The notes: generated by a model from the letters alone, not told the origin. A stretch of 64,000 bases of DNA from Octopus sinensis (GCF_006345805.1 NC_043012.1:33232001-33296000), one strand, 5' to 3'; shown: positions 12,182 to 47,681, counted from the stretch's first letter. Numbers and translations are program-made.

Positions 12182-12545
12182 AAACTAAAATATTTTTTTA
12201 TCTTAAAATATTCACAGTAATCTCTGAAAGGATTTCTACAAACACTCGGCACAGCCTTCTTCAATATTTGCAATGAATATTCAAAAGATATTAACCATGC
12301 ATACTTAATGATATTAATATCACTCCAAGGATGAAAATAATTTAATATCAAACTAATGTTTTGTACCAAGTCCTGAAGCCAATGTCGATAGGATTCGTAA
12401 AGGAAAGCAAGTAATCCTGTATGTAAATGGAGCATTTTAGGTGGTTAAGATCAATTGGTTAAAAGGTGAACTGCGCAAGTAATATTAAATTTAGATTACA
12501 TTATATAGGATTGCAAGATACAAACATCGGATATTTCACAAAGAG
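12182..12545 (+). promoter_or_regulatory. Conserved upstream block of ORF1, with CCAAT, ATTGG and TATATA elements
   Basis: Aligns with 25540-25915 over its length, and in part with 33045-33200 and 45511-45665. CCAAT 12379-12383, ATTGG 12454-12458, TATATA 12502-12507. Confidence 0.55.
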
Positions 12546-12705
12546 CATCAATGAAATCAGAGCTGTTTTTGAACATTGGGACTGTATAGAGAGGAAAATT
12601 TGCAGTGTGTATGTGTGTGTATGTGTGAGTATGTGTGTGTGTATGTATAATATAAATATATAAAAATCTGTAGAGTTTTCTTCTGATCTAAAAGGATTAC
12701 TCGAA

Positions 12706-14310
12706 ATGGCGGGCGCATCCTCACGTAGAATTGGCAAGAAGTTAATTGAGCGTTCCAAAACAGTTAGTAATAGTCCATATGCAAGAGGCTTAACTGTCAA
12801 GTCATTCCCCAAAGCATCTCCTAAACATTTAGGAGAAATTATAATGGGAAATCTCACAGAAAGCGAGTTAGAAGAAAAGGAAGCAGCAGCAGCAGCAGCA
12901 GCAGCAGAGGAAGACGACGGAGTAGAATTTGTAATTCCAGTACGAGGTTGGTCATTTGGAGAAGTGCATGAAATACCGAAGCGTATAGCCGGTAAGCAAA
13001 CAGAAATAATCCCATCAACGAGAGGAGAATTAACCAGAAAATTAGTAGAAGTCCCGCATGAAGATCTAGAAAGAAGGATGGAGGAAGAAGCTTATGGTTT
13101 TGTAAGGATGCGAAAAATTGGTGGGATAGCACGCAAACTCCCACCATTGGCGGAAGACCCCGAAGAAGAAGTGGTTCCGGTGTCTCTTGTAGTTCAACCT
13201 GAGATAGGCAGCCATTTGCACAGGCCTAAAACAATCTATCCTCCACAGTTGTATTCAGATATACAAAGTGACAGTTTCGAACCTATAATAGTAGACAGAT
13301 TTCCAGTAGAGGAGGTAGTAACTAACGAAATCCCAGAAGAGGAAGAGTTGCCCGATATGTGGAATGCAACTGTTGGAGAACGTTCTGGCTTGCTTGGAAC
13401 TGAGGGAGCAGCGGTAGGCGAAGCTCCCGATACAGTCTCTCCTTATGCAAATGTATTTTACCGTTTCGAAGATGATGAATCAGGAAGAGCATGGGGTGAG
13501 GTTTATCCGGATCAGAAAATATTTGAACCTCAGTTCGCAGACGAAGAAGAAATGTCACGCGTTATAGAACATGTCCCAGATTATCCAAACGTAACTTCTA
13601 GAAGTAGTTTGAGGACTACAAGAGATGAAAGAGCAGCTAACGCAGATGCAGAAGCAGCCCAGAAAGCACAAAAGAGTATAAGACACCGACAACAGCCCCT
13701 ATTCTGCATGAAATATGGTAAACATAGGGATGTACATGGAACTCCATGTTCAGCAAGGATAGAACAAACAAGCGATGCAGGAGGAGCTCTCATTGCAGTC
13801 AGGGCTGCAAGTAGGCCCGAAAGCTTTCTTTACGTAACTGCTAGAAGTCAAGATAGAGTTAACAGAATGAAACAAGGACTTCTGGAAGCACATGCTATGC
13901 ATGAAGCGATAGGAGATGAAGTGGTTACAAGAGGAGTAAGTACTAGATGTGAAGAGACCCCTTCTAGAACAGGAAGACGCCAAACTACTAGAAGTGAAAA
14001 GGTGGTTACAAGACAAGTAAGTACAGGACGTGGAGAGATCACTTCTAGAACAGGAAGACGCTCAGCTACTAGAAGTGAAGAGGAGGTTACAAAACAAGTA
14101 AGTTCTAAACGTGGAGTGAGCGAATCGAGGATGGGAAGTCGTGCAGCACCTGAAAGACAAATAAGTACTAGACGTGAAGCGGTGGTTTCGAAGACTGAAG
14201 GACGAACAACATCGAGAGGAAAAGTGACTACAAAACAACTAAGTACTACCCATGGAGAAGGGACTTTGAGACACTTAAATGTTAAAACTCGCAAGCCACC
14301 ATGGCGCTAG
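12706..14310 (+). CDS. ORF1: uncharacterised 534-aa protein, acidic N-half, Arg/Thr/Ser-rich ~27-aa repeats at the C-terminus
   Basis: 1.6-kb uninterrupted ORF that is not microsatellite. AATAAA at 14465-14470 and 14496-14501. No recognisable domain. Confidence 0.75.
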   Translation: MAGASSRRIGKKLIERSKTVSNSPYARGLTVKSFPKASPKHLGEIIMGNLTESELEEKEAAAAAAAAEEDDGVEFVIPVRGWSFGEVHEIPKRIAGKQTEIIPSTRGELTRKLVEVPHEDLERRMEEEAYGFVRMRKIGGIARKLPPLAEDPEEEVVPVSLVVQPEIGSHLHRPKTIYPPQLYSDIQSDSFEPIIVDRFPVEEVVTNEIPEEEELPDMWNATVGERSGLLGTEGAAVGEAPDTVSPYANVFYRFEDDESGRAWGEVYPDQKIFEPQFADEEEMSRVIEHVPDYPNVTSRSSLRTTRDERAANADAEAAQKAQKSIRHRQQPLFCMKYGKHRDVHGTPCSARIEQTSDAGGALIAVRAASRPESFLYVTARSQDRVNRMKQGLLEAHAMHEAIGDEVVTRGVSTRCEETPSRTGRRQTTRSEKVVTRQVSTGRGEITSRTGRRSATRSEEEVTKQVSSKRGVSESRMGSRAAPERQISTRREAVVSKTEGRTTSRGKVTTKQLSTTHGEGTLRHLNVKTRKPPWR

Positions 14311-14399
14311 TGATATTTAGAAATAACAGGGTGCATTCAGATATATTTCAATATCAACGAGTCAGAAGGAAAAAAAAAGATGAAATCTCGTAATTACAA

Positions 14400-16645
14400 T
14401 TATTCGAATTATTTGACAAATGCATCGACTTAACGGTGGTCGATCAGATATCGATAACCACTATAATAAATCACGTTCAATAATAATTCAGATTCAATAA
14501 ATTGAAAGTATAAATTATCCCTATTGATTTATTTATATATCTATATAACAGAATGTTGTGTGACAGGTCTATATCAGAGTATTAATGATACAATAAGAGA
14601 AGACTGAATTGACCATGTAATGGTGTTCAGCAGTCTTTTTCAAACAAATCTATGATGAAAACACCGTTCCGACTATGACCTCCCAGGCTTTTCTCTTTTC
14701 TCTTTTTTGATATCAGAGGCTACATTGTCTCAACTAATTTTAAGACGGTAAGGTACGATGAGAGGGAGATTTCGTTGGTATTTCTAGGAAAGAGGTGCAA
14801 TTAATTGTTGAATCTGAAGTCGTTCACTTGGGCTTTAGTGAAGGTATCATCTGAAGGAATGGTCGGCAGTCTGAAGGGTTATAAGGGATATGAACGTTTC
14901 TCTTAAATACTTGGATTTATTAGGGTTAAGCACAAAGAACTGAGTGTCTATTTCTCTTTTCATATGAAAATAAGTTTCATCATTTACATTTCTGAAAATC
15001 TTTGCAAATCGTTAACCTTATAAATTCAGTGTATCTTTCATTTTACCCAATTTGAATATCTTTATATATAAAAGTGAAGTTGTGTGTCTGTCTCCTACGA
15101 TTTAGATTACTAACTACTCCCACATTTTGCGGTGCAGTTTAATCAAAAGCGGGTATCTTATAGTCGTGATTCATATCGAGCCCTTCTGGGTATTAGCGCG
15201 CGTCTACAATGAGTCTACGATTTAAAAAAAATTTACCATCTTTTTTTCCCATTTTTAATGCATTTTTTGCTATTATATAAGGGAAGTAACTCTCTAAAAA
15301 TGCTTATATAGTTATTTCCCTTACAAACCCGAGCAACGCCGGGCGATACTGCTAGTATACAATAAATAGAGTAACAAACGCCCATTCATTGTTCACATAA
15401 CCATTGTTTATATAACCACCTTGGAAATGTCAGCCTATTCTGCATGTGATCAATGAAACTATTTTGTAAGGCAGCACGTTCATTTTTGTTTTGTAATTCC
15501 ACAATTTTAGCCGAAATAATTTTGTGTGTAACTGAACGTTGAGTAAAAAACTTCAATATGTTAGGTTAAGCAGATTTACCACTACTGCCACCAACACCGA
15601 CACCTCCCCCTTGTTGTCAGCGTCGTCGGCATCGATGTCGTGGCACTCCTCCTCCTCCTTCTTGTCGTCCTCCTCCTTCTTGTCGTCCTCCTCCTTGTTG
15701 TTCACCTCCTCCTCCTTGTTGTCCACCTCCTCCTTGTTGTCCACCTCCTCCTTGTTGTCCGCCTCCTCCTCCTTCTTGTTCTCCTCTTCCTTCTTGCCCC
15801 CATCTCCTCCTTCTTTCCCTCCTCCTCCTCCTCCTCCTTCTTTCCCCCACCTCCTCCGTATCCCCCTTCTTGCCCTCCTCCTCCTCATTCTCCCTCTTTC
15901 CCTCCTCCTCCTCTTCCTCCTCCTTCTTCTTCCCCTCCTTCTCCTCCTCTAGTAGCGCTAGAATACCACGACAATGCGGGGTCATTCCGAAAAGCTCTAC
16001 CTGCCACGATTTCATCTCAATCGAAGGAGGGGAGCTTTCTCCGTCCGGGTTGCGGATCCGTGGAACAAGCTGCCAGACGAGATGGTGAAGATGCCGACGA
16101 CCGCTTTGTTCAAAGCCTCCCTGGACCTCAAGTGGCCTGAACTCTTTACATGAACACCACCCTGTACTTAACTCCATGTCCCCCTACATGGCCTTGCTAT
16201 TTGCTTTTGAGCCAAATTAACTAACTAACTAACTAACTAACAATGTATATTTTTTTTTACCATTGTGTCGTTAATTTATCAGAAATAGTATTCAATTCTC
16301 CCGCAAAGTCCACCAGACAAATTAAAATAAAGAATACATTTGATAGATAGTTCTAGATGAATTACATCCATTGCAAAAGACGAAATGGTCACGGCTAGAG
16401 CGCCGATGATCACAGGCTTACTGAATCACGGCTAATCTGGTGCTAAACAAGAAGTTTTATGTTTGTAGTATAATTGGTGAGTCAACTGAAGAAATACCAA
16501 TACAGCGAATGGTGATGTGGTTATGCTGAGATAGAAATATTATTCAATACGAACGAAGGTCCAAAAAAAAAGTAACGAAAGACTATTTGTGAAAGACTAT
16601 TTGTTTCCTTATATTTCTAGTCACATAAAAGCATCTTTAAATTAT
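14400..16645 (+). repeat. Duplicated 3' flank block, copy 1 (paralogue 29098-30513)
   Basis: 14400-14788 is nearly identical to 29098-29487. 15630-16645 matches 29488-30513 with internal indels. Confidence 0.9.
15059..15355 (+). mobile_element. Short non-autonomous Helitron
   Basis: Starts TC after an A, ends with hairpin CCCGAGCAACGCCGGG (15328-15343) and CTAG before a T. Confidence 0.8.
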
Positions 16646-18191: not shown

Positions 18192-18410
18192 TGGCGAGCT
18201 GGTAGAATCGTTAGCGCACCGGACAAAATGCTTAGCGGCATTTGATCCGTCTCTACTTTCTGAGTTCAAATTCCGCCGAGATCGACTTTGCTTTTTATCT
18301 TTTCGGGGTCGATGAAATAAGTACAAATTGAACAGTGGGGGTCAATGTAGTCGACTAGTTCTCTCCCTCCGAATTTCAGTTCTTGTGTTTATATTAGAAA
18401 GGATTATTAT
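18192..18410 (+). mobile_element. tRNA-derived SINE, family 2 (variant tail)
   Basis: GGCGAGCTGG...GAGTTCAAATTCCGCCGAG...CTTTCGGGGTCGAT, shared with the other family-2 copies. Confidence 0.8.
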
Positions 18411-25260: not shown

Positions 25261-25539
25261 AGATATGTAATCCTTTCTGTAAGCCACTTTGGGTATTAGA
25301 TATTATTATTAAGACGACGAGCTCGCAGGATCGTTATGTGCGCATGTGCGTATATGTGCATGTATGGGTGGGTGAGTGTCTGCAGCTGGTATTTTATGTG
25401 CGCCTGCATGTGTGTTTATGGAAGTGCATGCATATTTGTTACATAAAACCGCTGTATGTATAACATTCCGAACGCATAGTAATTGTTTGTTATGTTGTTG
25501 ATGTATGGCAGCTATAAAACATTCTTATATTTGATCATA

Positions 25540-25915
25540 TTAAACTAAAATATATTTTTATCTTAAAATATTCACAATATGCTTTCAGAGGACTTCTGCA
25601 AACGCTCAATGCAAAATCAACTGCCATAAGTGTGGTGAACATTCATAAAATACATTAACTGTGATTACTCATTGATATAAATTTTACTCCAAGGATGAAA
25701 GCAATTTAATATCAAACTAATTAAGTTTCGTACCAAGTCTTGAAGCCAATGTCAATAGGATTCGTAAATGAAAGCAAGTATCCCTGTGTGTGTAACGGGA
25801 ACATTTTAGGTGGCTTAGATCAATTGGTTAAAAGGTGAACCGCACAAGTAATATTAAATTAAGATTACATTATATAGGATTTCACTATTCAAATATCGGA
25901 TATTTCACAAAGAGA
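25540..25915 (+). promoter_or_regulatory. Conserved upstream block of ORF2
   Basis: Homologous to 12182-12545. CCAAT 25746-25750, ATTGG 25823-25827, TATATA 25871-25876. Confidence 0.55.
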
Positions 25916-25982
25916 TAAATTCACTGAATAAACAATAAAAAAAAGTCAACTTCTGATTTGGTTTTGTGTTAGATATATATAT

Positions 25983-26036: not shown

Positions 26037-26038
<2 letters not shown>

Positions 26039-29000
26039 GCTTGCCTTAAAGTCTTCAAATGCTTACAAATTCTGGGAAAGACTCGAGATATATTGCGAAA
26101 CAACCTCTGAAGAGCTTCTTTCTGATCAAAGCGGATGGTGCAAATTTGAAAAAAGCAATGAAGTAATTTTTGAAGAGTTTCTAATTGAAGTAATCATCTC
26201 AAGATTGGTTGACAAAACCTTTCATAGAAGTTCGAAAGGCCCCGAACAGCCACAGAAACAACTCAGCTGGTCTGAAGCTACTGACAATAAAGTCGATGAA
26301 GAGTTTTCAGAAGAGGAGAGAAAATGCTTTAAAATAATCGAGGAATCTCAAGCGGAAGTTTATGAAGATTTGGCGGAAGACGAAAAAACAGCAAGACTTT
26401 TACAATCCCATTTGCATCACCAACTTCCTTGTACACCGCTCCAAATTAGAATGCCACAAATTTTCATTAGTGGTGGACAGTATAAATCAAAGTCTTCATA
26501 TGAAATACCTCGACCTCAAACGAGGACTGACAGAAATCCCCGTAGCTATCAAAGACATCCAACAACACCAATGACATCATTTACAGAAGAGGAAAAATTT
26601 TACAAGTTTCCATCTGCAAGAGAAGGATGGAGTTGTTTGATCTTACCTAGAGCGCAGCAAAGAAGCACAATAAAAGTTCCAAGCACTGGTCAAGAAGATA
26701 TATCAAGTTACTCTACAAGTTGGTCAGAACCACGAAGTCCAGTCCATTATATGAGAATGGATGAACTTTGGGCTAATCTAGAAAAGGATAAAGCAGACGG
26801 AGCAGAAAGCGTAGCATTCACTGTTGTACCACCCACCTATCCGGAATTGAAGGCATATCCTGCAGGTCAAACGATGCTTAAACGTTCAAGACTACCCGTA
26901 AGAATAAAAAACCTTCCCTTTAACCGTCACACGACGTCTTCACGAATACCCGTAGATACGATGCCTTCAAGAATACCCAGAAGAACAGAACGCCTGCTTA
27001 AAAGCCGTGCGATGCCTCCAAAAATACCCGCTAGAATAGAACGCTTACGCAAAAGAGGTGCTATGTCTTCAAGAATACCCCTGAGAACAGAATACTTACC
27101 TAAAAGATATACGATGCCTTCAAGTGTACCTCTAAGAAAAGAATACTTGCCTAAAAGCTATACGATGCCTTCACGAATACCCATAAGAACAAAACGCTTA
27201 CTTAAAAGAGGTGTGTTACTCTCAACAAAACCCGCTCGAACAGGACGCTTATTTGGTGCTATGCCTTCAAGAATACCCGTAAGAAAAGAACTCTTACCTC
27301 GTAGACGTCGTGTGAAGACTGTAACTTTTGCAGAGCTTCCTCATCGAATATATAAAGCATCACCTGTCACGAAAGCAATGCGAAGCGGTATGCAAACAAG
27401 AAGATGGAATACTTTACAAGAGCCATACCAACTTCCAAGACCTAGTAAAGAATATGATTTAAGACAGGCGGCACAAAGACAAGCTGTCAAAAGTATGAGA
27501 GATTTAGCAATCGAAAAACACCGTGCGAAGGTTTCTGGCAAGAGAACAATACCAAGCGCTAGGGAGGCACAAATGGCAGCTCTGGAAAAGATAAGGGCTG
27601 CAGAGGCAGTAAAAAGACAAGCCGAGAAAAGAATGAGGGATTTAGAAATCGAAAACCAACGTGCGAAGGCCTCAGCCAAGGAAACAGTACTAAGCCCTGA
27701 GGAAGCACAAAGAGCAGCTCTCGAAAGGATAAGGTCTGCAGGAATCGATAAAGTCTTTGAGATAGTCTATGGCAGAAAACCATCGGTAACTATAGATATA
27801 GTACCAAGCAGCCTACAGGCAGACATAGAACCACTACCAAGCAGTCCACAGGATTCAGGCAAGAAAATACCAAGCCCTACCAAAATAATACAGGATGAAA
27901 TACAACAGCGACATCAATGTTTGATGGATCGTATTGATGAATATAATGACAGAGTAGATACACTAGACCATTATATGGAAAGGATAAAGGATTCACAAGA
28001 GCCATACGTAGTTCCAGAACGTTTTGATGAACTTGCTATCAGAGAGGCGGCAGCTTCCAGAGAATTGGAAGCTGTCAGAGAGGCGGCAAATAGACAACTT
28101 CAAGATCTGATGGAAATGCGTTCTAGATCACGGAGAACTTACCCGCGAGTTTCAGTTCCAGATCTTAATAGAGAAGCTCCCAGAGAATTTGAAGCTGTCA
28201 GAGAGGCGGCAAATAAACAACTTCAAGATCTGATGGAAATACGTTCTAGATCACAGAGAACTTATCCGCGAGTTTCAATTCCAGATCTTAATAGATTATC
28301 TTCCAGTGAATTGGAAGCTATCAGAGAGGCGGCAAATAGACAACTTCAAGATCTGATGGAAATGCGTTCTAGATCACAGAGAACTTACCCGCGAATTTCA
28401 GTTCCAGATCTTAATAGAGAAGCTCCCAGAGAATTTGAAGTTGTCAGAGAGGCGGCAAATAGACAACTTCAAGATCTGATGGAAATACGTTCTAGATCAC
28501 AGAGAACTTATCCGCGAGTTTCAATTCCAGATCTTAATAGATTATCTTCCAGAGAATTGGAAGCTATCAGAGAGGCGGCAAATAGACAACTTCAAGATCT
28601 GATGGAAATGCGTTCTAGATCAGAGAGAACTTACCCGCGAGTTTCAATTCCAGATCTTAATAGAGTAGCATCAACCGCAGCTCCACTTTACAATGTGGCG
28701 GAACTTAGTAATAGAGGAGAAAAAAGGACTGGGAAACTTCATTCAGATCGTCTTTATTCTTCACGTTTGAATTATGAAGCAAGACCGAAGCTATCTGCAG
28801 CAGAGCGCCGTACATGGAACGAGGCACGACCAGTGGGGTCTAAAATCAGATATATCAGTCATCTTAGCCAAGGTACTGAGCCAAGGTTATCATTCAAGGC
28901 TCCTCGAGGTACAGTGAGTTCAAGAACTTCCTTAGAAGGTACACGTCACGCATGCCCAATTCATAGTATGAGACTTCCAAGACCACAAGGAACTCGTCGT

Positions 29001-29054
29001 TCGAGAACGTTGAGTATAGAAAAGTTTCCTAGAGACTTCCAAGAATATTATTAA
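26037..29054 (+). CDS. ORF2: uncharacterised 1005-aa repeat protein (17-aa SRIP repeats, 2 x 46-aa and 5 x 41-aa helical repeats)
   Basis: 3-kb uninterrupted ORF. AATAAA at 29164-29169 and 29195-29200 in the shared 3' block. Confidence 0.8.
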
Positions 29055-29097
29055 AACTAAAAAAAAAGCAAAATAAGTGAAATACACAAACATAAAG

Positions 29098-30513
29098 TTA
29101 TTCGAATTATTTTACAAATATATTGAAATTAACGGTGGTCGATCAGATATCGATAACCACTACAATAAATCACGTTCAATAATAATTCAGATTCAATAAA
29201 TTGAAAGTATAAATTATCCCTATTGATTTATTTATATATCTATATAACAGAATGTTGTGTGACAGGTCTATATCAGAGTATTAATGATACAATAAGAGAA
29301 GACTGAATTGACCATGTAATGGTGTTCAGCAGTCTTCTTCAAACAAATCTATGATGAAAACACCGTTCCGACTATGACCTCCCAGGCTTTTCTCTTTTCT
29401 CTTTTTTGATATCAGAGGCTACATTGTCTGAACTAATTTTAAGACGGTAAGGTACGATGAGAGGGAGATTTCGTTGGTATTTCTAGGCATCGATGTCGTG
29501 GCACTCCACCTCCTCCTTCTTGTCCTCCTTCTCCTTCTTGTCGTCCTTCTCCTTCTTGTCGTCCTCCTCCTTCTTGTCGCCCTCCTCCTTCTTGTCCTCC
29601 TTCTCCTTCTTGTCGTCCTCCTCCTTCTTGTCGTCCTTCTCCTTCTTGTCCCCCCTCCTCCTCCTCCTTCCTCCTTTCTTCTTCTTCTTCTTCTTCTTCT
29701 TCTTCTCCTTCTTCTTCTTCTTCTCCCCCTCCTCCTCCTCCTCCTTCTTCTTCTTTTTCTTCTTCTTCTTCTTCTTCTTCTTCTTCTTCTTCTTCTTCTT
29801 CTTCTTCTTCTCCATCATGTTTGTTAGGCAGCATGATTTCTCCTCCTCTAGTAGCGCTAGAATACCACGACAATGTATATTTTTTTTTTACCAATGTGCA
29901 GTTAATTTATCAGAAATAATATTCAAATCTTCCGCAAAGTCCACCAGACAAATTAAAACAAAGAATACATTTGACAGATAGTTCTAGGTGAATTACACCC
30001 ATAACAAAAGACGAGATGGTCACGGCTAGAGTGCCGATGATCATAAGATTACTGACTCACGGCTAATCTAGTGCTAAACAAGACGTTTTGTTTGTAGTAT
30101 AATTGGTGAGTCAACTGATGAAATACCTATTTCTTTACTACCCACAAGGGGCTAAACACAGAGGGGACAAACAAGGACAGACAAACGGATTAAGTCGATT
30201 ACATCGACCCCAGTGCGTAACTGGTACTTAATTTATCGACCCCGAAAGGATGAAAGGCAAAGTCGACCTCGGCGGAATTTGAACTCAGAACAACGACAGA
30301 CGAAATACGGCTACGCATTTCGCCCGTCGTGCTAACGTTTCTGCCAGCTCGCCGCCTTCAACTGATGAAATACCAATACAGCGAATGGTGATGTGGTTAT
30401 GCTGAGATAGAAATATTATTCAATAGGAAGGAAAGTTTAAAAAACACCCAACACAACGAAATATTTTCTAATCACATAAACGATGTGTAAAATTTAGGCA
30501 TCTTTAAATTATT
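29098..30513 (+). repeat. Duplicated 3' flank block, copy 2
   Basis: See copy 1. Lacks the equivalent of 14789-15629 and carries an extra SINE. Confidence 0.9.
30128..30357 (-). mobile_element. tRNA-derived SINE, family 2
   Basis: 17-bp TSD TCAACTGATGAAATACC at 30111-30127 and 30358-30374. The empty site is at 16482-16498. Confidence 0.9.
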
Positions 30514-32722: not shown

Positions 32723-33194
32723 TGAGTGAGATGAAAAATGTGAGATCACCAGACTAAGTTCCTTTCTGTATTGCGTGTCTATCTAAGTGTATATATGTGG
32801 GATCGAGTGTCCTCATGCATGTATGTGTGCTTTCATGCACATGTATATGTGTGCAGGTGTGTGTGTGTGTCTACAGTATATGTGTGGATATGCGTATGGC
32901 GTCCGTATTCTGCTTATGTGTTTGTGTATGTGTCTAAGTATAAACGTGTTAGTTACATCAATCTACTATATGTATGAAATACCGAACGCATAGTGATGAG
33001 TTGATATGTTGTATGACAACTATAAAACATTTTATATCCAGTCATATTAAACTAAAATATATTTTTATCTTAACATATTCACAATAGGCTTTGAGAGGAC
33101 ATCTACAAACGCTCAATACAAAATCAACTGTGTGGTGAACATTCATAAAACATATTAACCGTGCATCCTCATTGATATTAATGTTACTCAAAGA

Positions 33195-36100
33195 ATGAAC
33201 TTAAGTCGGGTAGGTTTTAATGATGACAGTATTCTAGATGAAAGACAGTTATATGAAGGACAGTTATTGCCTTTAGCATCGTCTACGCCCCAAAAAAGTA
33301 GAAAGAGAACTGAGAGCTTGTCACAACTTCATCCACATCTAACTTATGATGAAGCAAAACGGCCCGAATTTGAGGATGATAGGCAAAGAAATCTCCAACA
33401 GGGTGACGCAAGAATATCATCTCTATCAAGGTCTGGAGTAACTCCACCAGGAGCTACAGCGAGTGACAGAGTGTCATCAGTTAAGCGTGATGAAAATATT
33501 TCAGATGAAAGAACTTTATGGCCTTCCCACGCGATAGATACGCCCACAAAATATAGAGAGAGACTTGCACGTTTATCTTCACGTCCTCAACGTGTAACAA
33601 ACGGTGCAGCAAAATGGCCCGAAGTTGCGGACACTACGGCTTTGTCTCAAATAGAATTTCCACAGGAAAAGGAAATCGACGAATTGATTGAAACACACCC
33701 TGATAGAATTTCGAAACAAAAACCATTAACTCCCGTTGGCCCTATACCCTGGGAAAATATTCTGCGAAAGCAGGACTCATCTTACAAGTTTCCCTCCGTT
33801 GACCTAAGTTGGTCCCAGATGCTTCTTAGTGATGATGAAATTCCCAGTGGGCGACGAAAGAGGAGGCGTTCACATGAACCCAGTATAGTCCATGATTCTT
33901 TAACACCTCGTAGACTATCAGATATTTCATATGTTTACCAAGAACCTCACCTAGACTTAATAAATGTATCTCCTGCAATTGACGAATTATTTCGAGACGT
34001 AACTCCTTCAAGGCCTGGAGAACCTCCACCAGGAGATACAGCTAGCCTCTCACCAGTTAAGTATGATGAAAACGAAAGCGTTATTGAAGAAGAGATAGAT
34101 AGACTTGATGAAATGAGGAGCGTTATTGAAAAAGAGATCGATATACTGGATGAAAAAAGGAGTGTTACTGAAGAAGAGATTGATAGATTGGATGAAATGA
34201 GGAGTGCTGCTGAAGAAGAGATCGATAGACTGGATGAAATTAGGAACGCTACTGAAGAAGAGATCGATAAACTGGATGAAATTAGGAGCGCCATTGGGAA
34301 AGAAACCTACAGATTGGATGAAATGAGGGGTGCTACTGAAGAAGAGATCGAAAGAGCGGATGAAAAAAGAAGCGTTACTGAAGAAGTGATCGATGGACTG
34401 GATGAAATGAGAAGCGTTACTGAAGAGATCGATGGACTGGATGAAAAGAGGAGCGTTACTGAAGAAGAGATCGATAGACTGGATGAAATTAGGAACGCTA
34501 TTGGAACAGAAATTGAAAGACTGGATGAAATTAGGGGTTTTACTGAAGAAGAACTCGAAAGACTGGATGGAATGAGAAGCGTTACTGAAGAAGAGATCGA
34601 TAGACTGGATGAAATGAGGAGCGTTATTGAAACACAAACTGAAAAGACAGACGATAGAATTTCGCCACAAAGGCATCACAAATATCTGTCCGAAACATTA
34701 CCAGCACTACAACGCAGTCCTTTACGCATAACCCCTGATTATCCTCTTTCTCGCACATTACCAATCGTTAAAATATCAGAGTTTTCAGACCCTTACCGTC
34801 CTGCCACTCGTGCTAGCATCCCCCCCAAATCTCAAATGTCACCACGTTACCGACAGCCACAAGAAATATTATTACGCACTTCCACTGATGCTAGTGTATC
34901 ACCAGTCAGTTCCGAGGAACCCAGTTTGTTATCAGATGACCTTATAGATCAGTCACTATCACCTTTCAGCAAAATATCTGACATTTCTTTAATTTTGTCA
35001 GAACCTAGTGTAAACGTACCATACGAAGATTCTGAAAGTATAGTTCCTGGGGTGTTCCCAGAGAATATTCCAAATATTTTAGAAGCATACGAAGAAAAAG
35101 ATTCTGAAAGCGTTTTGCGTGATATTTTTGCTCTACCACCTATTTCAGATGAATTTCAAGAAGAGGATGCTAAAGATGAAGGTTCGAGCCATTATGAGAG
35201 TTGGGAAGAGTTTCCAGAGGAGGAATATATTACAAGCATTCCGGAAGAATCTAAGCAAAATACCGAAAGGGTATTACAAGCAATTGCAGATCTATCATCG
35301 ATTGAGGGAGATTCTGAAAACGCAGTGTTTGCATCTCAAATAACAAAACCAAGTCCTTTAGATTTAGGTGTGAAACAACTGTTTAGCAAGTTACGTTCAT
35401 TTATTGCCTATAAATTATCGATTGGGGAAGATCCAAATGCAGAGCTTCCTGAAGAAGAAGATACCCGTGGAATTTACTTAGCTGTAAAGAATCTGCATGA
35501 AAGGATGCATGCGGAAGATCGCCTTCAATCGAACTTAGCTAAGCCGGAAGTTGGAGAAAAAGAGACTTCACCGGTTAGAGTACGAAAGCCTAGAGTGACA
35601 AAGCCAAAAGTACCAAAGACTAAAGGGCCAGAACCTACAACGGCTAGAGTACGAAAGCCGAGAGTACCAAAGCCTAGAGTTCCAAAGTCTTCACCGGTTA
35701 GAGTACCAGAGCTATCACCAGTTAGAGAACCAGAACCTACAACGGCCAGAGTACGAAAGCCGAGAGTACCAAAGCCTAGAGTTCCAAAGCCTTCACCGGT
35801 TAGAGTACCAGAGTTATCACCAGTTAGAGAACCAGAACCTACAACGGCTAGAGTACGAAAGCCGAGAGTACCAAAGCCTAGAGTTCCAAAGCCTTCACCA
35901 GTTAGAGAACCAGAGCCATCACCAGTTAGAGGACCAGAGCCTGCACCGGTAAGAGTACGAAAGCCAAGAGTAACAAAGCCTAGAGTACCAAAGTCTAGAG
36001 TACGCGAGGTTTCACCGGCTAGAGAACCAGAGCTTTCACCAGTTAGAGAACTGGAACCTTCACCAGTTAGAAAACCAGAGCCTGCACCGGTTAGAGTACG

Positions 36101-37235
36101 AAAGCCAAGAGTAACAAAGCCGAGAGTACCAAAGTCTAGAGTACGCGAGGTTTCACCGGTTAGAGAACCAGAGCTTTCACCAGTTAGAGAACCGGAACTT
36201 TCACTAGTTAGAGAAGCAGAACCTGCACCGGTTCGAGTACGAATGCCAAGAGTAACAAGGCCGAGAGTACCAAAGCCGAAAGTAGGAAGGCCGAGAATAC
36301 GCAGCGTTTCACCAGATACATTACATTTGCTTTTACAACTTGGATCCCCAGAGTCTAGAGTACACGAGGTTTCACCAGCTAGAGAACCAGAGCTTTTACT
36401 AGATAGACCCCCAGAGCTTTCACTAGTTAGAGCACCAGAGCCTACAACGGCTAGAGTACGAAAAATCAGAGTACCAAGGCCGAGAGTACCGAAGCCTTCA
36501 CCATTTAGAGAACCAGGGATTTCACCAGTTATTTTACCAGAGTCTTCACTGGATATAGTACCAATGCCTAGAGTACGAAAGCCGAGAGTTTCGAGGCCTA
36601 GAGTACCGAAGCCTTCACCAGTTAGAGAACCAGGGATTTCACCAGTTATTTTACCAGAGTCTTCACCGGATATAGTACCAATGCCTAGAGTACGAAAGCC
36701 GAGAGTTTCGAGGCCTAGAGTACCGAAGCCTTCACCAGTTAGAGAACCAGGGATTTCACCAGTTATTTTACCAGAGCCTTCACCGGATATAGTATTAATG
36801 TCTAGAGTACGAAAGCCGAGAGTTTCGAGGCCTAGAGTGCCAAAGCCTTCACCAGTTAGGGAAGCAGAGCTTTCACCAGTTATTTTACCAGAGCCTTCAC
36901 CGGATATAGTACCAATGCCCAGAGTACGAAAGCCGAGAGTTTCGAGGCCTAGAGTGCCAAAGCCTTCAACAGTTAGAGAACCAGAGCCTTCTTCAGGCAG
37001 TGATCCGTCTCTACCGGTTAGAGTTCGAAAGCCTAGAGTTCGACGGCTTACTGTGCAAAATCCTAGAATACCAAGACCTTCACCAATTAGAGCACAAATG
37101 CCTCCACTAGAGTATGAATCAACTTTGAGATGGACTCGTCCTAGTAGAAAAAGCCTGGCAACGATTTTTGCAAGCGAATCTGACAGCTCTCCACCATCAC
37201 CAGATCTTCGAATTCGGCCAGGTGAAAATGAATAA
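33195..37235 (+). CDS. ORF3: uncharacterised 1346-aa protein with 13 x 14-aa acidic repeats and a Pro/Arg/Val/Lys-rich SPVR repeat tail
   Basis: 4-kb uninterrupted ORF. The upstream 33045-33200 matches the shared block. The true start codon is uncertain. Confidence 0.8.
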   Translation: MNLSRVGFNDDSILDERQLYEGQLLPLASSTPQKSRKRTESLSQLHPHLTYDEAKRPEFEDDRQRNLQQGDARISSLSRSGVTPPGATASDRVSSVKRDENISDERTLWPSHAIDTPTKYRERLARLSSRPQRVTNGAAKWPEVADTTALSQIEFPQEKEIDELIETHPDRISKQKPLTPVGPIPWENILRKQDSSYKFPSVDLSWSQMLLSDDEIPSGRRKRRRSHEPSIVHDSLTPRRLSDISYVYQEPHLDLINVSPAIDELFRDVTPSRPGEPPPGDTASLSPVKYDENESVIEEEIDRLDEMRSVIEKEIDILDEKRSVTEEEIDRLDEMRSAAEEEIDRLDEIRNATEEEIDKLDEIRSAIGKETYRLDEMRGATEEEIERADEKRSVTEEVIDGLDEMRSVTEEIDGLDEKRSVTEEEIDRLDEIRNAIGTEIERLDEIRGFTEEELERLDGMRSVTEEEIDRLDEMRSVIETQTEKTDDRISPQRHHKYLSETLPALQRSPLRITPDYPLSRTLPIVKISEFSDPYRPATRASIPPKSQMSPRYRQPQEILLRTSTDASVSPVSSEEPSLLSDDLIDQSLSPFSKISDISLILSEPSVNVPYEDSESIVPGVFPENIPNILEAYEEKDSESVLRDIFALPPISDEFQEEDAKDEGSSHYESWEEFPEEEYITSIPEESKQNTERVLQAIADLSSIEGDSENAVFASQITKPSPLDLGVKQLFSKLRSFIAYKLSIGEDPNAELPEEEDTRGIYLAVKNLHERMHAEDRLQSNLAKPEVGEKETSPVRVRKPRVTKPKVPKTKGPEPTTARVRKPRVPKPRVPKSSPVRVPELSPVREPEPTTARVRKPRVPKPRVPKPSPVRVPELSPVREPEPTTARVRKPRVPKPRVPKPSPVREPEPSPVRGPEPAPVRVRKPRVTKPRVPKSRVREVSPAREPELSPVRELEPSPVRKPEPAPVRVRKPRVTKPRVPKSRVREVSPVREPELSPVREPELSLVREAEPAPVRVRMPRVTRPRVPKPKVGRPRIRSVSPDTLHLLLQLGSPESRVHEVSPAREPELLLDRPPELSLVRAPEPTTARVRKIRVPRPRVPKPSPFREPGISPVILPESSLDIVPMPRVRKPRVSRPRVPKPSPVREPGISPVILPESSPDIVPMPRVRKPRVSRPRVPKPSPVREPGISPVILPEPSPDIVLMSRVRKPRVSRPRVPKPSPVREAELSPVILPEPSPDIVPMPRVRKPRVSRPRVPKPSTVREPEPSSGSDPSLPVRVRKPRVRRLTVQNPRIPRPSPIRAQMPPLEYESTLRWTRPSRKSLATIFASESDSSPPSPDLRIRPGENE

Positions 37236-42449: not shown

Positions 42450-44340
42450 TTGCATAAGTTGGGCGTAAAAGCTTTGTTGTCCATCCTGCGTGCGTTACCC
42501 AACCAAAGTAAATTTCTATCAATGAGAATTCCTATTATGGGAGGCAGACCAGCACACCGTAGAATCCCTTCCTGATCTTGTCAAAGGGAATAGTATTCGT
42601 AATTCGTCGTAGCTGTCTCATCATACATGCATGCAACTTGTCTACTTGAGCTTTATAGATTGTTCAGGTTTCTGCTCCATTCCACAGGAGCGAACGCACT
42701 ATAGCTTGGTGCACCTTACATTTGACATACAAAGAAATGCCTGTTTTCCTTCAGCCCTTCCGGCTGCTTGCCAAATGAAGTACAAGCTTTACTCCTTCTG
42801 TATGTGATTTCCTAGTCCAGTCGTGCAATGAGGTGGTGCTGCCTAAGTATTTGAAAGGCGGCGAGCTGACAGGAACGTTAGCACGCCGGACGAAATGCGG
42901 AGCCGTATTTCGCCTGCCGTTACGTTCTGAGTTCAAATTCCGCCGAGGTCGACTTTGCCTTTCATCCTTTCGGGGTCAATAAATTAAGTACCAGTTACGC
43001 ACTGGGTTCGATGTAATCGACTAAATCCGTTTGTCAGTCCTTGTTTGTCCCCTCTGTGTTTAGTCCCTTGTGGGTAGTAAAGAAATAGGTATTTGAATGC
43101 TTTGTACTGGGCCACTTTCATGTCTAATAATGATGTTTTCTTCTGCTACAGGGGCATTTAGGTTCTTCACGGGTCGGTTTAGGCATTCGGTTTTTTTCTG
43201 ACGTTAATCACTAGGCTGAACTGTTGTGCAGCTCTGGCAAAGTTATCTATCAGTTTCTGCATATCTTCAGCGTTGTGAGCAACCAGTGCACTATCATCAG
43301 CAAACAGCATCTCGCGTATTATAGCCTTCGTAACACGCCTCATTGCTTTATATTGTGCAGTATTGGACAGATCAGCATCATGATGCGTCTGGATGTAAAT
43401 CTCCTCCTTCCAACTCCTTCAGAGGCAACTTTCAACACTGCTGTGAGATAAAAGGAGAACAATGCTGGAGCAAGTACGCACCCTTGTCTAACTTCATTTG
43501 TCACCATAAACTCGCTCGAGGTATTGCTATCTTGTACTACAACTGCCTTCATTCGTTCGTGCAGAGACCTGGCCAAATTGATGAGCCTTCGCGGACATTC
43601 ATGTTTCGTAAGAACCACCCAAAGTCCATCACTGGCTACTGTGTCGAAAGCCTTTGCGAAGTGTATGGACACTGCATAGGCATGTTTTGCTCAATGCATT
43701 TTCCCTGAATTTGGCGAAGATAGAATATCATGTCCACAGTGCTTCTACCGCAACGGAAGTCCCACTGAGTCTCAGGTAAGACATTTGAATAGATATACTC
43801 AGTCTGTTTTACAGAATACGAGTCTCGATCTTCCCAGCTATTGATAGAAGAGCTTTTCCTCGGTAATTTCCACAGTCCCCTCTCCAAACTGTTTGAAGAT
43901 AGGAATGATACCTGCGTCTGTCCAATCTTCTGGAATCGTTTCTGCCCACCAAATCTGGAGCACAATGCTATACAAGTTTTCAAATGAGCTTCGTACCTCC
44001 ATGCTTCCAGATTTCAGCGAGTATGCCACATCATTTGTTTGACTGCATCATTGAATTCCTTGAATATAGGAATGTCATCTAAACATTGATGGTTAGCTAT
44101 TGTGTAGCCTTCCCGAGAGCGGTATAGGTCACAGCCTTTGAGATATTAAGCAGGCTGTCAAAGTGATTGGCAAATCTATCAAGGATCTCCGATTTTTCTT
44201 AGAGTACTGTTTTGCCGTCCATAGATATGAGTCTTGTTGGGCCCCTTCTCTGTGACCCGTATACCTCTCGAAGTCCTGAGTATAAAGCTTTCATGTCGTT
44301 TTTGTCTGCCTAATGCTGTAGGTCTTCAGCTTTGGCTTCC
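42450..44340 (-). mobile_element. RTE-clade LINE reverse transcriptase remnant
   Basis: GFRCGRSTVDMIF-like segment, AKAFDTVASDGLW, VRQGCVLAPALFS, FKYLGS. Many frameshifts. Confidence 0.85.
42856..43088 (+). mobile_element. tRNA-derived SINE, family 2, nested in the RTE
   Basis: TSD GTATTTGAA at 42847-42855 and 43089-43097. Confidence 0.9.
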
Positions 44341-45395: not shown

Positions 45396-45447
<52 letters not shown>

Positions 45448-45510
45448 ATATATATGTATGTATGTACCATATAGAAGTTGAAATTGTACATTTTCGTTGA
45501 CATAATATTG

Positions 45511-45816
45511 TCTTAAAGTAAAAAATATTTTTGTCTTAAAATTTTCCCATCAGGCTTTGAAAAGACTGCTACACATACGTGACCCATAATCTTCCTCCAC
45601 AAGTGTAGTGAATTTTTGAAAGAATTATCCCTTGTGCATGAGCATGAATGCAGGAAGCAATTTCTTTTATAACTTCTGATCGACCGTTTCGAATCGATTT
45701 TGGAAAACGATTTTTAAATCTGATTGGCTGAAAATTTCTCATTCATCATATCCTCTTAGAAAATCTCAAGTTTCGACCAATGATTAGAATCTCAAGCGCA
45801 CTTCTTATTTATAAAA
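45511..45816 (+). promoter_or_regulatory. Shared upstream block plus NF-Y-like CCAAT pair and TATA of ORF4
   Basis: 45511-45665 aligns with the block upstream of ORF1-3. TGATTGGCTG 45721-45730, CCAAT 45777-45781, TATAAAA 45810-45816. Confidence 0.5.
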
Positions 45817-45842
45817 CCTAAAAGAAAGCAGGAACAGCTAGT

Positions 45843-46649
45843 ATGTTTCGATCGTTTGTGGGAAATGCTGCAACAGATAGTGTTGATGATTCATATTCAG
45901 AAGATCTGAGCTCTATTGATCCTGAAATGTATTTATGGAGAGGTGTCCTGAAGAAGACACCTGAAGAAGAGACATATGGTATAGTGAATGAACCAGTGGT
46001 ATTTACGGAAAGAGAGATTCCAAATATTGATATAGAGTTTGTTCCTGGATCTTTACCACCATCTGAGGAAGATATAATAATAGAAAGACCTGGAGTGGTA
46101 TTTACAGATGAAGCGGTTCCATATATTGATATAGAATTTGTTCCAGAATCTTTACCATTATCTGAGGAAGATATAGTAATGGAAAGACCTGGAGTGATAT
46201 TTATAGATGAGGCGGTTCCATCTATTGATGTGGAATTTGTTCCTGGATCTTTACCATTATCTGAGGCAGATACAGTAATAGAAAAACCTGGAGTGATATT
46301 TACAGATGAAGCGGTTCCATCTATTGATGTGGAATTTGTTCCTGGATCTTTACCATTACCTGAGGAAGAAATGCTAATAGAAAGACCTGGAGTGGTATTA
46401 ACAGATGAGGTATTTCCTGGATATTTACCATCACCAGTACAATTTCCAGTGAGGTCGATTCCTAAAGAACTTGTGTATGCTAGATTGTCTCCAGATATTG
46501 GAGATCAACCAACTGAAATTGAAGGCATTACACCCTTGGTCATACCTAGAAGTAGATTCCCTAAAATGTTATTTTCACCCCTTGCTGAGCTTTCGTCATC
46601 TGGAGAAGACACTGAAAAAGATATTCCCGAATATGAAACTTTGGCCTAA
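45843..46649 (+). CDS. ORF4: uncharacterised acidic 268-aa protein with about 4.5 x 33-aa repeats; possibly a truncated gene
   Basis: Repeat unit ERPGVVFTDEAVPYIDIEFVPESLPLSEEDIVM. Broken coding-like sequence follows to 46993. Confidence 0.65.
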   Translation: MFRSFVGNAATDSVDDSYSEDLSSIDPEMYLWRGVLKKTPEEETYGIVNEPVVFTEREIPNIDIEFVPGSLPPSEEDIIIERPGVVFTDEAVPYIDIEFVPESLPLSEEDIVMERPGVIFIDEAVPSIDVEFVPGSLPLSEADTVIEKPGVIFTDEAVPSIDVEFVPGSLPLPEEEMLIERPGVVLTDEVFPGYLPSPVQFPVRSIPKELVYARLSPDIGDQPTEIEGITPLVIPRSRFPKMLFSPLAELSSSGEDTEKDIPEYETLA

Positions 46650-46993
46650 TTAAGACACGGAAAAAGATATTTCCGAAGATGACAGTTTGATCGAATTTTG
46701 TGAGTCAATCAATGGAGAAGCATCTGAAAGAGATTGAAAGAGAGGCTGTTTATGTATTACCCGAAGAAGAAAAATGCTTTGGAACATATGAACTACTGAC
46801 TGAACCTCTTATATCTTGGTTCACATCTAACGATTTGTATCCACGTCTTGTCGAGGCTTCACTACCTGAAGACTAAGACATCTCACCATTGCGTACATCT
46901 GAAAGACCTCTTGCTAAAAGGTTTCCACCTTTTGCAGAACTATCCTCATCTGTGGAAGAAACTGATGAGAATTCTGAAAGTATGGCATATTGA
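46650..46993 (+). pseudogene. Disrupted coding-like extension of ORF4
   Basis: DTEKDISEDDSL and RFPPFAELSSSVEETDE echo ORF4 DTEKDIPEYETL and LFSPLAELSSSGEDTE. Contains frameshifts and TAA stops. Confidence 0.55.
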
Positions 46994-47681
46994 ATGAACT
47001 GTTTCTAACCAGAAATCTCGAGAAGTCTGCAAAAATATTAGTTGCTGAACTTTAAACAGAACAGAAGGTCTACTCGAACATATTTCCTTATCAAAACCAA
47101 AAACCTCCCCCACCCTGAATCTACAATAAAAGTGTTCAAATTATTAACATGCATCAAAATTCACTGAGGTCAATCAGGTATCAATAACAAATGTAACAGA
47201 TTCAGTTCAATAATATAGATTGAATAAAATGAAAGCATTCTCGATTCCTATTAGTTTATTTTATTATTTAATTGTTCTCTGAAAAAAAGACTTCTTAGTC
47301 TTCTTCAGTGTAGAATGACAGAAAAAGGTAAATGGTAGCATTCATTATGCTGTTGCTGAAATTTAGATCAGACATGATCCACTGTATCTGGTATCATAAA
47401 GTATTTCCAGTTATGAACATTCAATATTTTTTGTGACACGTACAAGAACTACAGAGGATCATCTTTACGTCTCTGATATAAAATAATAATAATCCTTTCT
47501 ACTAAAGGTACAAGGCCTGGAAATTTTTTTGTTGGAGGAGACTAGCCGATTACATCGACCCCACTATTTCACTGGTACTTAACTTATCCACCCCAAAAGG
47601 ACGAAAGACAAAGTCGACCTCATTGGAATTAGAACTTAGAACGTGGTGACAAACGAAATACCGTAAAACATTTCGTCTGGC

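What the first reader, a model, noticed from the sequence alone, without database searches (positions are those of the whole stretch)
12182..47265. Tandem family of four large intronless repeat-protein genes with conserved flanks but barely alignable coding regions
Seen: four same-strand ORFs (12706-14310, 26037-29054, 33195-37235, 45843-46649) stay open over 0.8-4 kb in a stop-rich landscape. All four follow a homologous non-coding block, and ORF1, ORF2 and ORF4 are followed by a homologous AATAAA block. Their proteins share almost nothing beyond acidic/basic segregation and a different tandem repeat in each (about 27; 17/46/41; 14 and SPVR; 33 aa). This is the reverse of normal paralogue evolution. 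No transposase, RT or viral hallmark is present. Inference: a lineage-specific cassette that swaps or rapidly regrows disordered cargo under one regulatory programme. Intronless, fast-evolving, Arg/Ser/Pro-rich clusters of this kind are typical of germ-line, sperm or secreted structural proteins, but the tissue cannot be read from DNA.
Basis: partly seen in the sequence, partly recalled or inferred. Interest (0 to 1): 0.85.

Follow-up and report, generated by a model that had tools for sequence, protein, structure and literature searches.

The report
Octopus repeat-protein genes sharing conserved flanks
Four neighbouring octopus genes keep nearly the same short non-coding DNA before and after them, while the long, repeat-filled proteins they encode have changed beyond recognition; this reversed pattern is known from mammalian semen-clot genes but is new for cephalopods.

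Summary
Four same-strand ORFs (534, 1005, 1346 and 268 aa) lie in an Octopus chromosome window. The first three far exceed the longest chance ORF (242 aa). Each follows a non-coding block whose 35-nt core occurs exactly four times in the 2.72-Gb genome. ORF1, ORF2 and ORF4 are followed by a block carrying AATAAA signals that occurs exactly three times. BLASTP, profile comparison, tblastx and nhmmer find no similarity between the four coding regions.

ORF1-3 have syntenic orthologues in O. vulgaris and O. bimaculoides, annotated as uncharacterised proteins. ORF1 and ORF2 are single-exon coding sequences in both species. Against O. bimaculoides, the upstream blocks evolve 2-15 times slower than intergenic DNA. 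The coding regions evolve 1.4-3 times faster, with dN/dS about 1.2-1.3. The frames still stay open and all 24 coding indels are multiples of three. The 3' blocks show gene conversion.

Best reading: an Octopus-restricted tandem family of charged, largely disordered repeat proteins. Repeat turnover erased coding homology while selection kept a shared 5' control module. The closest analogue is the mammalian REST (semenogelin/SVS) family. Tissue and function remain unknown.

The parts
12162..12552 (+). Upstream block of ORF1. The 35-nt core motif is at 12182-12216. The distal part was displaced to 11571-11658 by an insertion of about 500 bp.
   Evidence: The orthologous block in O. bimaculoides differs by K=0.035, against 0.074-0.097 for intergenic DNA.
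12706..14310 (+). ORF1, 534 aa. The N-terminal half is acidic. The C-terminal half is basic and Arg/Ser/Thr-rich, with 27-aa repeats.
   Evidence: Orthologues: P0008 (O. vulgaris), P0009 and P0045 (O. bimaculoides), P0010 (Logan). dN/dS 1.3; all indels in frame.
14381..14798 (+). Downstream block of ORF1: putative 3' UTR with AATAAA at 14465 and 14496. Paralogous homology continues at 16259-16560.
25430..25923 (+). Upstream block of ORF2. The core motif is at 25542-25576. A (TA)n microsatellite follows and abuts the ATG.
   Evidence: 100% identical to O. vulgaris over the aligned columns and 96% to O. bimaculoides.
26037..29054 (+). ORF2, 1005 aa. A conserved N-terminal region of about 135 aa is followed by basic 17-aa repeats, then 46-aa and 41-aa charged repeats that look helical by eye.
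   Evidence: Codons 1-135 have dN/dS 0.54; the rest 1.3-1.6.
29081..29499 (+). Downstream block of ORF2, with AATAAA at 29164 and 29195. Paralogous homology continues at 29890-30436 and is interrupted by a SINE-like insertion at 30121-30358.
32945..33209 (+). Upstream block of ORF3. The core motif is at 33049-33083. The block ends at the ORF3 start codon, which aligns with a conserved ATG inside the blocks of ORF1 and ORF2.
   Evidence: The core is 99.4% identical to O. bimaculoides.
33195..37235 (+). ORF3, 1346 aa. It has acidic 14-aa repeats, an acidic middle, and a basic Pro/Arg-rich C-terminal half with 25 [ST]P.[KR] sites.
   Evidence: A 1359-codon open orthologue exists in O. vulgaris. 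The 5' half has an orthologue in O. bimaculoides, P0012.
45513..45627 (+). Upstream block of ORF4, diverged. The core motif is at 45515-45549.
   Evidence: nhmmer E 4.6e-15; alignment; motif hit.
45843..46649 (+). ORF4, 268 aa, acidic, with 33-aa repeats. This is the weakest member and may be decaying.
   Evidence: It is single copy. No orthologue could be examined.
47103..47327 (+). Downstream block of ORF4, with AATAAA at 47223. It lies 454 nt after the stop codon, against 27-71 nt for ORF1 and ORF2.
   Evidence: It is conserved in O. bimaculoides.

Best explanation
This is an Octopus-restricted tandem family of four separate gene units.

Anatomy (shown). Each unit has a conserved 5' non-coding module of about 115-390 bp, one long uninterrupted coding exon, and, in three of the four, a conserved 3' module with tandem AATAAA signals.

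Role of the flanks (inferred). The 5' module is probably the promoter-proximal region plus 5' leader. The 3' module is probably the 3' UTR and poly(A) site.

Proteins (shown from sequence). They are highly charged, low-complexity and repeat-built, with no hydrophobic signal-peptide-like N-terminus. ORF2 and ORF3 fall on the disordered side of the charge-hydropathy boundary, ORF1 is borderline, and ORF4 falls on the folded side. ORF1-3 have segregated acidic and basic blocks.

Origin (inferred). The family arose by tandem duplication before the O. vulgaris / O. bimaculoides split. The coding exons have since evolved at or above the neutral rate through substitutions and in-frame birth, expansion and loss of tandem repeats. 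This erased homology between paralogues.

Selection (shown). Selection still keeps each frame open. It also holds the 5' module 2-15 times more constant than intergenic DNA. The 3' modules of ORF1 and ORF2 are homogenised by gene conversion.

Function (inferred by analogy only). A shared 5' module implies co-regulation in one cell type. The function depends on bulk properties such as length, charge blocks and phosphorylatable S/T-P motifs rather than exact sequence. This is typical of fast-evolving structural or reproductive proteins. The tissue is unknown.
For: Real coding genes:
- ORF1-3 are 2-5 times longer than any shuffled ORF, and only one frame is open.
- The orthologous frames are open in O. 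vulgaris (535, 1005 and 1359 codons for ORF1-3) and in O. bimaculoides (638, 747 and at least 582 aa).
- In neutral simulations an open frame survives with P=0.002 (ORF1) and never in 5000 trials (ORF2).
- All 24 coding indels against O. bimaculoides are multiples of three; only about a third of the flank indels are.

Fast cargo:
- dN/dS is 1.32 (bootstrap 0.92-2.0) for ORF1 and 1.20 (1.00-1.48) for ORF2.
- K is 0.129 for ORF1 and 0.234 for the ORF2 body, against 0.074-0.097 for intergenic DNA.
- Repeat arrays differ between species.

Constrained 5' module:
- K is 0.035, 0.037 and 0.006 for the three blocks that could be compared.
- The core motif occurs 4 times in the genome, always before an ORF.

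3' module:
- AATAAA pairs lie 110-186 nt after the ORF1 and ORF2 stops.
- The two Logan contigs end 141 and 169 nt after their stop codons, which matches.
- The ORF1 and ORF2 blocks are 94-98% identical within the window species but 87-89% identical to their O. bimaculoides orthologues.

Other points:
- No residual coding homology.
- No further cassette or long non-repeat ORF within 60 kb on either side.
- Each of the two ORFs tested is single copy.
Against: - No transcript data could be read, so the start site, UTR introns and co-expression are all inferred.
- The putative leaders of ORF1 and ORF2 hold 8-14 upstream ATGs, which is odd for an unspliced leader.
- NCBI files the O. bimaculoides ORF1 and ORF2 products as isoforms of one locus, LOC106878220. 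This hints at linked transcripts rather than independent units.
- dN/dS confidence intervals include 1, so positive selection is not shown.
- ORF4 is barely longer than chance, its repeat units differ equally at all three codon positions, and its stop codon lies 454 nt before the 3' block.
- ORF3 lacks the 3' block.
- Common ancestry of the four coding regions is assumed. Only one weak shared motif (YKFPSxxxxWSxxLL, E 0.038) supports it.
Confidence: 0.6

Rival explanations
1. The cluster is one complex locus. A shared promoter and leader exon upstream of ORF1 would be spliced to alternative terminal cassettes, each with its own stop codon and poly(A) site. The conserved upstream block would then be a branch point, polypyrimidine tract and acceptor plus leader, not a promoter.
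For: - NCBI groups the ORF1 and ORF2 orthologues of O. bimaculoides as isoforms X1-X4 of LOC106878220 in two annotation versions.
- The invariant core reads like a branch point (ACTAAAA), then a T-rich tract, then an AG in all four copies (by eye).
- The many upstream ATGs would be removed by splicing.
Against: - ORF1, the first cassette, has the same block, so the shared exon would have to lie further upstream. No conserved candidate was found there.
- The ORF3 start codon lies inside the block, and its N-terminus MNLS is conserved in O. bimaculoides.
- The ORF3 orthologue is a separate NCBI locus, LOC128249525.
- The isoform grouping could come from read-through, or from reads that map to both of the near-identical flanks.
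Confidence: 0.15
2. The cargo is not homologous by descent. Only the regulatory shell (5' and 3' modules) was duplicated. New ORFs then arose independently inside each already transcribed and polyadenylated unit, by expansion of short in-frame repeats. The shell would act as a nursery for new genes.
For: - The most sensitive methods find no similarity between the ORFs.
- Homology between the ORF1 and ORF2 units stops about 120-150 nt before the ATG and resumes 38-85 nt after the stop. The replaced segment is therefore larger than the coding sequence.
- Each ORF is largely built from its own repeat units.
- In ORF1 and ORF2 the conserved ATG of the block opens only a 4-codon ORF.
Against: - The measured coding rate (K up to 0.23 against O. 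bimaculoides), together with repeat turnover, could plausibly erase homology of an old duplicate.
- ORF1-3 share an architecture of an acidic block followed by a basic block, and ORF2 and ORF3 share a motif at similar positions.
- ORF2 has a non-repetitive, conserved N-terminal region.
- ORF1 and ORF2 were already distinct in the most distant species found.
Confidence: 0.15
3. The ORFs are accidental. Tandem repeats and T-poor composition would keep frames open in non-functional DNA, and the flanks would be leftovers of a segmental duplication or a low-copy mobile element.
For: - ORF4 is marginal, with neutral repeat units and a nearly open antisense frame.
- Microsatellite pseudo-ORFs of about 550 aa exist elsewhere in the window.
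- dN/dS is about 1.
Against: - The frames stay open across three species despite 12-23% divergence (P=0.002 or less under neutrality).
- All 24 coding indels are in frame.
- Only the sense frame is open.
- The 5' blocks evolve more slowly than intergenic DNA.
- The flanks have 3-4 copies in the genome, not many.
- The ORF2 N-terminal region shows purifying selection.
Confidence: 0.04

Closest known systems
Mammalian REST genes (rapidly evolving seminal-vesicle-transcribed genes: semenogelins, rodent Svs2-6, guinea-pig Svp genes), related to PI3/elafin
   Same: - A tandem cluster of paralogues.
- The promoter, first exon and 3' non-translated exon are conserved, while the main coding exon is not alignable.
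- The difference is attributed to duplication and slippage of tandem repeats.
- Repeat content differs between close species.
- Some paralogues are about 95% identical within a species but about 80% identical between species (PMC7556508). Here the 3' blocks behave the same way.
   Different: - There is no sequence relationship; this is an analogy, not family membership.
- REST genes have three exons and a signal-peptide exon, and their products are secreted transglutaminase substrates.
- The octopus coding regions of ORF1 and ORF2 are single-exon and none of the four has a signal-peptide-like N-terminus.
- The conserved 5' part here is entirely non-coding.
Epidermal differentiation complex genes (loricrin, involucrin, SPRR, LCE), recalled from general knowledge
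   Same: Clustered genes whose whole coding sequence sits in one exon. The proteins are low-complexity and built from tandem repeats that vary quickly in number and sequence. Expression is co-regulated in one cell type.
   Different: These are vertebrate skin genes with conserved terminal peptide motifs. No such motifs, homology or tissue link was found here.
Clustered protocadherin and UGT1 loci, recalled from general knowledge
   Same: Tandem large single exons, each preceded by its own copy of a conserved upstream element.
   Different: Those variable exons are homologous to each other and splice to shared constant exons. Here each ORF ends in a stop codon, followed in three of four by poly(A) signals, and the ORFs are not homologous.
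Reflectins (cephalopod-specific, clustered genes), recalled from general knowledge
   Same: A cephalopod-restricted tandem gene cluster encoding repeat-built, disordered proteins.
   Different: Reflectin paralogues share recognisable repeated motifs. Here there is no Pfam hit and no similarity between paralogues.

Membership tests
REST (semenogelin/SVS) gene family | Conserved non-coding or terminal gene parts combined with an unalignable, repeat-built main coding exon among tandem paralogues | tested here: met
   This is a shared evolutionary pattern only.
REST (semenogelin/SVS) gene family | Three-exon structure with a signal-peptide-coding first exon and a secreted product | tested here: not met
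   The ORF1 and ORF2 coding sequences are single-exon in the O. vulgaris and O. bimaculoides annotations. None of the four has a hydrophobic N-terminus; the longest hydrophobic run is 4-8 residues.
REST (semenogelin/SVS) gene family | Sequence homology to SEMG/PI3 exons 1 and 3 or to a WFDC domain | tested here: not met
   No Pfam family reached its cut-off, and ORF1, ORF2 and ORF4 have no PDB relatives. A direct DNA comparison with SEMG/PI3 was not run. The host is a mollusc.
Transposable-element or MITE-derived flanks | Many dispersed copies in the genome, not tied to particular genes | tested here: not met
   The upstream blocks have 3 BLAST hits and the core motif 4 hits. The downstream block has 2 full-length BLAST hits (five further hits match only about 50 nt) and its motif 3 hits. 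All of these lie in this cluster. The SINE control gave more than 1600 candidates.
Clustered protocadherin / UGT1-type variable-exon locus | Variable exons end in a splice donor and join shared constant exons | tested here: not met
   Each ORF ends in a stop codon. AATAAA pairs lie 110-186 nt after the ORF1 and ORF2 stops, and AATAAA signals lie 476 and 574 nt after the ORF4 stop. No constant exons were seen within 60 kb.
Reflectins | Repeated reflectin motifs shared among paralogues | tested here: not met
   No Pfam hit. No similarity between paralogues.
Sperm nuclear basic proteins with SPKK-type motifs | Dense S/T-P-x-K/R motifs in a strongly basic protein | tested here: inconclusive
   The ORF3 C-terminal half has 25 [ST]P.[KR] sites and a net positive charge. 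ORF1, ORF2 and ORF4 have 0-1 such sites.
Sperm nuclear basic proteins with SPKK-type motifs | Expression in the male germ line | not testable with these tools
   No transcript or proteome data could be reached. The DNA of the two Logan contigs was not available.

The most novel reading that the evidence does not exclude
The duplicated 5' and 3' modules form a reusable expression shell. Unrelated long ORFs would be born and rebuilt inside it by in-frame repeat expansion. The four proteins would then share regulation but not ancestry, making this a natural nursery for new coding sequence. Alternatively the four may be alternative cargoes of one transcription unit.
Probability: 0.15. Interest if true: 0.8.

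Novelty: new variant of a known kind. Interest (0 to 1): 0.45.

Why it matters
In this family the non-coding control module is the most constrained part of each gene, and the protein sequence is less constrained than intergenic DNA. Even so, the reading frames are kept open. This gives a clean invertebrate parallel to the mammalian semen-clot genes.

It also offers a tractable case for two questions. How does selection act on the bulk properties of disordered repeat proteins? How does repeat turnover make paralogues look unrelated, or make a family look like orphan genes?

There are practical consequences for annotation. The O. bimaculoides ORF3 model is chimeric across an assembly gap. The O. 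vulgaris ORF3 model is truncated. The 35-nt core motif is a ready-made candidate cis-element for a cell-type-specific programme in octopus.

Tried and rejected
Searches that found nothing useful:
- Pfam on the four proteins: nothing above cut-off. The only near hit was ERM_helical on the acidic repeats of ORF3, which looks compositional.
- PDB sequence search on ORF1, ORF2 and ORF4.
- Rfam over the whole window.
- Consensus folding of the upstream block: covariation term -0.04, one compensatory pair. A conserved RNA structure is not supported.
- Profile-profile comparison, tblastx and nhmmer between the ORFs.
- A conserved small upstream ORF in the block. By inspection the short ORFs differ between the ORF1 and ORF2 copies.
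- Literature searches by locus names, accessions and run numbers.

A TATA-like CTATAAAAC sits at the block edge. In the window species and O. vulgaris an insertion has separated it from the ORF1 core, so it is unlikely to be essential.

- The DNA of the two Logan contigs was unavailable.
An IUPAC pattern was used instead.

ORF4 orthologues could not be reached. The O. vulgaris loci stop at about window position 43949, and O. bimaculoides has an assembly gap there.


Full report
**Where the window lies.** The window is contig C16, bases 33,232,001-33,296,000, of a 2.72-Gb assembly with 13,516 contigs. Its ORFs are 98-99.7% identical at the nucleotide level to O. vulgaris GCA_951406725.2, and the two regions are collinear. 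O. bimaculoides GCA_001194135.2 is also collinear, at about 91-93% identity in intergenic DNA. The host is therefore an Octopus very close to O. vulgaris, but not that assembly, because exact protein look-ups failed.

**The observation.** The four ORFs are real.
- The longest ATG-ORF in 100 block-shuffles was 242 aa. ORF1 to ORF3 (534, 1005 and 1346 aa) exceed that several-fold.
- Only the sense frame is free of stops; the other five frames hold 11-149 stops each.
- ORF4 (268 aa) is marginal, and one antisense frame has a single stop.
All are multiples of three.
- Charge blocks are confirmed for ORF1-3.
- BLASTP, blastn, hhalign on orthologue alignments, tblastx and nhmmer find nothing significant between the four coding regions. 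The only trace is a weak motif, YKFPSxxxxWSxxLL, at similar positions in ORF2 and ORF3 (E 0.038). Its tryptophan is not kept in the O. bimaculoides ORF3.

**The flanks.**
- Self-comparison gives an upstream block shared by ORF1 and ORF2 (82% over 393 bp) and by ORF2 and ORF3 (81% over 265 bp).
- A profile of these blocks also finds a diverged copy at 45513-45627, before ORF4 (E 4.6e-15).
- The block of ORF3 ends at its start codon. That codon aligns with a conserved ATG in the ORF1 and ORF2 blocks, which there opens only a 4-codon ORF.
- The downstream block of ORF1 and ORF2 is 97.7% identical over 390 bp. Homology continues for about 2 kb and is interrupted by a SINE-like insertion. ORF4 has a copy that is 71% identical. 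ORF3 has none.
- The blocks are cluster-specific. BLAST of the genome finds only the local copies.
- The 35-nt core, allowing up to 2 mismatches, has exactly four hits in 2.72 Gb. All are on the + strand, 146-524 nt before each ATG.
- A motif around the second AATAAA has exactly three hits.
- As a control, the 238-bp SINE-like element gave more than 1600 candidates at 95-98% identity.
- No further cassette or long non-repeat ORF exists within 60 kb on either side. ORF2 and ORF4 are single copy.

**Are they genes?** ORF1 and ORF2 are annotated as single-exon coding sequences in O. vulgaris (hypothetical proteins) and O. bimaculoides (LOC106878220).
- ORF3 is open for 1359 codons in O. vulgaris, although the annotation stops at 704 aa.
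- Its 5' half is present in O. bimaculoides as LOC128249525. That model is chimeric: a 100-N gap joins it to the 3' flank of ORF4.
- Two Logan assembly proteins (46-64% identical) show that ORF1 and ORF2 were already distinct in a more distant, unnamed species.
- Under neutral substitution at 12% divergence, ORF1 stays open in 0.2% of simulations and ORF2 in none of 5000.
- All 24 indels in the ORF1 and ORF2 coding alignments against O. bimaculoides are multiples of three. Only about a third of the indels in four flanking alignments are.

**Rates against O. bimaculoides.**
- Intergenic DNA: K = 0.074-0.097.
- Upstream blocks: K = 0.035, 0.037 and 0.006.
- ORF1 coding: K = 0.129.
- ORF2, first 400 nt: K = 0.049.
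- ORF2 body: K = 0.234.
- dN/dS is 1.32 (bootstrap 0.92-2.0) for ORF1 and 1.20 (1.00-1.48) for ORF2. The first 135 codons of ORF2 give 0.54 and the rest 1.3-1.6.
- Differences between repeat units show little or no third-position bias.
- The non-coding 5' block is therefore the most constrained part of each unit. The protein body is the least constrained and changes faster than neighbouring intergenic DNA.
- Species differ by whole repeat blocks. O. bimaculoides has extra NEIPEEEI units and extra 27-aa repeats in ORF1, lacks the 41-aa array of ORF2, and has its own duplications in the ORF3 N-terminus.

**The 3' blocks.** The ORF1 and ORF2 copies are 94-98% identical within the window species. 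They are only 87-89% identical to either O. bimaculoides copy, and those two copies are 89% identical to each other. This is the signature of gene conversion. In contrast, the upstream blocks group by orthology. AATAAA pairs lie 155/186 nt after the ORF1 stop and 110/141 nt after the ORF2 stop. The Logan contigs end 169 and 141 nt after their stops and begin 663 and 757 nt before their starts. If they are transcripts, which could not be checked, the 3' block contains the poly(A) site and most of the 5' block is leader.

**Protein properties.** There are no Pfam, PDB or Rfam matches. Charged residues make up 27-34% of each protein. ORF2 and ORF3 lie on the disordered side of the charge-hydropathy boundary, ORF1 is borderline, and ORF4 lies on the folded side. 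None has a hydrophobic N-terminus. ORF3 carries 25 [ST]P.[KR] sites.

**Interpretation.** The best-supported reading is a tandem, Octopus-restricted family of separate gene units.
- Their coding exons evolve by near-neutral or faster substitution and by in-frame repeat turnover.
- Selection keeps the frames open and keeps a common 5' control module.
- Gene conversion homogenises the 3' modules.
- Function probably depends on bulk properties of the proteins. The tissue is unknown, and a reproductive role is only an analogy.

**Two rivals remain open.**
- The single-locus reading: NCBI files ORF1 and ORF2 of O. bimaculoides as isoforms of one locus, and the invariant core could be read as a splice acceptor region.
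- The non-homologous cargo reading: paralogous homology stops outside the coding sequence on both sides.

**Comparison with known systems.** The reversal of normal paralogue evolution is documented for the mammalian REST genes. There the promoter, signal-peptide exon and 3' non-translated exon are conserved. The main coding exon is unalignable because of repeat duplication and slippage. Some paralogues are more alike within species than between species (PMC7556508). The octopus cluster shares the pattern. It does not share the sequence, the three-exon structure or the signal peptide, so it is an analogue and not a member. It also fails the tests for transposon-derived flanks, protocadherin-type variable exons and reflectins.

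**Verdict.** This is a new, non-homologous instance of a known evolutionary pattern, of moderate interest, and public RNA-seq data could settle the open questions.

Noticed in passing
window 23332-24411 (-): A 359-aa ORF with a reverse-transcriptase domain (PF00078, E 1.7e-21). It is a retroelement fragment between ORF1 and ORF2.
   Followed up: partly
window 30121-30358; also 42855-43095, 53020-53246, 62811-62982, 18193-18356, 47544-47686: A SINE-like element of about 238 bp. The genome search gave more than 1600 candidates, and the scored copies are 95-98% identical. One copy interrupts the 3' flank of ORF2 relative to that of ORF1.
   Followed up: partly
window 38466-40904: A 46-bp AT-rich satellite with 53 copies at 97% identity, between ORF3 and ORF4. 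It is also present in O. vulgaris.
   Followed up: no
window 6208-7991 (+), 57671-59402 (both strands): ORFs of about 550 aa made purely of microsatellite-like low-complexity sequence (HTHTYIH-type and poly-Met/Ile). They have no Pfam hit and no cassette flanks, and are most likely not genes.
   Followed up: partly
L049:11914-12013 (O. bimaculoides CM046615.1): A 100-N assembly gap joins the 5' half of the ORF3 orthologue directly to the 3' flank of ORF4. The NCBI model LOC128249525 (XP_052829356.1, 582 aa) is therefore chimeric, and ORF4 is unassembled there.
   Followed up: yes
L022:17346-21422 / L050:10001-14077 (O. vulgaris OX597828.1): The ORF3 orthologue is open for 1359 codons, but the annotated model (CAI9734162.1) has 704 aa. 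A 571-aa minus-strand model overlaps the remainder.
   Followed up: partly
window 11571-11658 (+) and 11682-11767 (-): The distal part of the ORF1 upstream block sits about 500 bp upstream of the core, next to an inverted copy. An insertion or rearrangement shared with O. vulgaris, but absent from O. bimaculoides, separated it from the core. Weak matches to the same element of about 90 bp lie about 13 kb beyond the window's 3' end and about 26 kb before its 5' end.
   Followed up: partly
window 15646-15949 and 29505-29813: CT-rich 18-bp repeat arrays of the TCCTCCTTC type lie at matching positions downstream of ORF1 and ORF2. They are part of the duplicated 3' flank and create spurious ORFs on both strands.
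   Followed up: no
window 1809-2221 versus 55400-55540 and 56712-56909: Direct repeats at 86-92% identity, about 54 kb apart, bracket the cluster region. Their nature was not determined.
   Followed up: no
P0046 versus P0045 (O. bimaculoides ORF1 isoforms): The isoforms differ by a 20-aa block inside the NEIPEEEI repeats. This suggests either length variation in the repeats or an alignment-driven pseudo-intron in the NCBI models.
   Followed up: no
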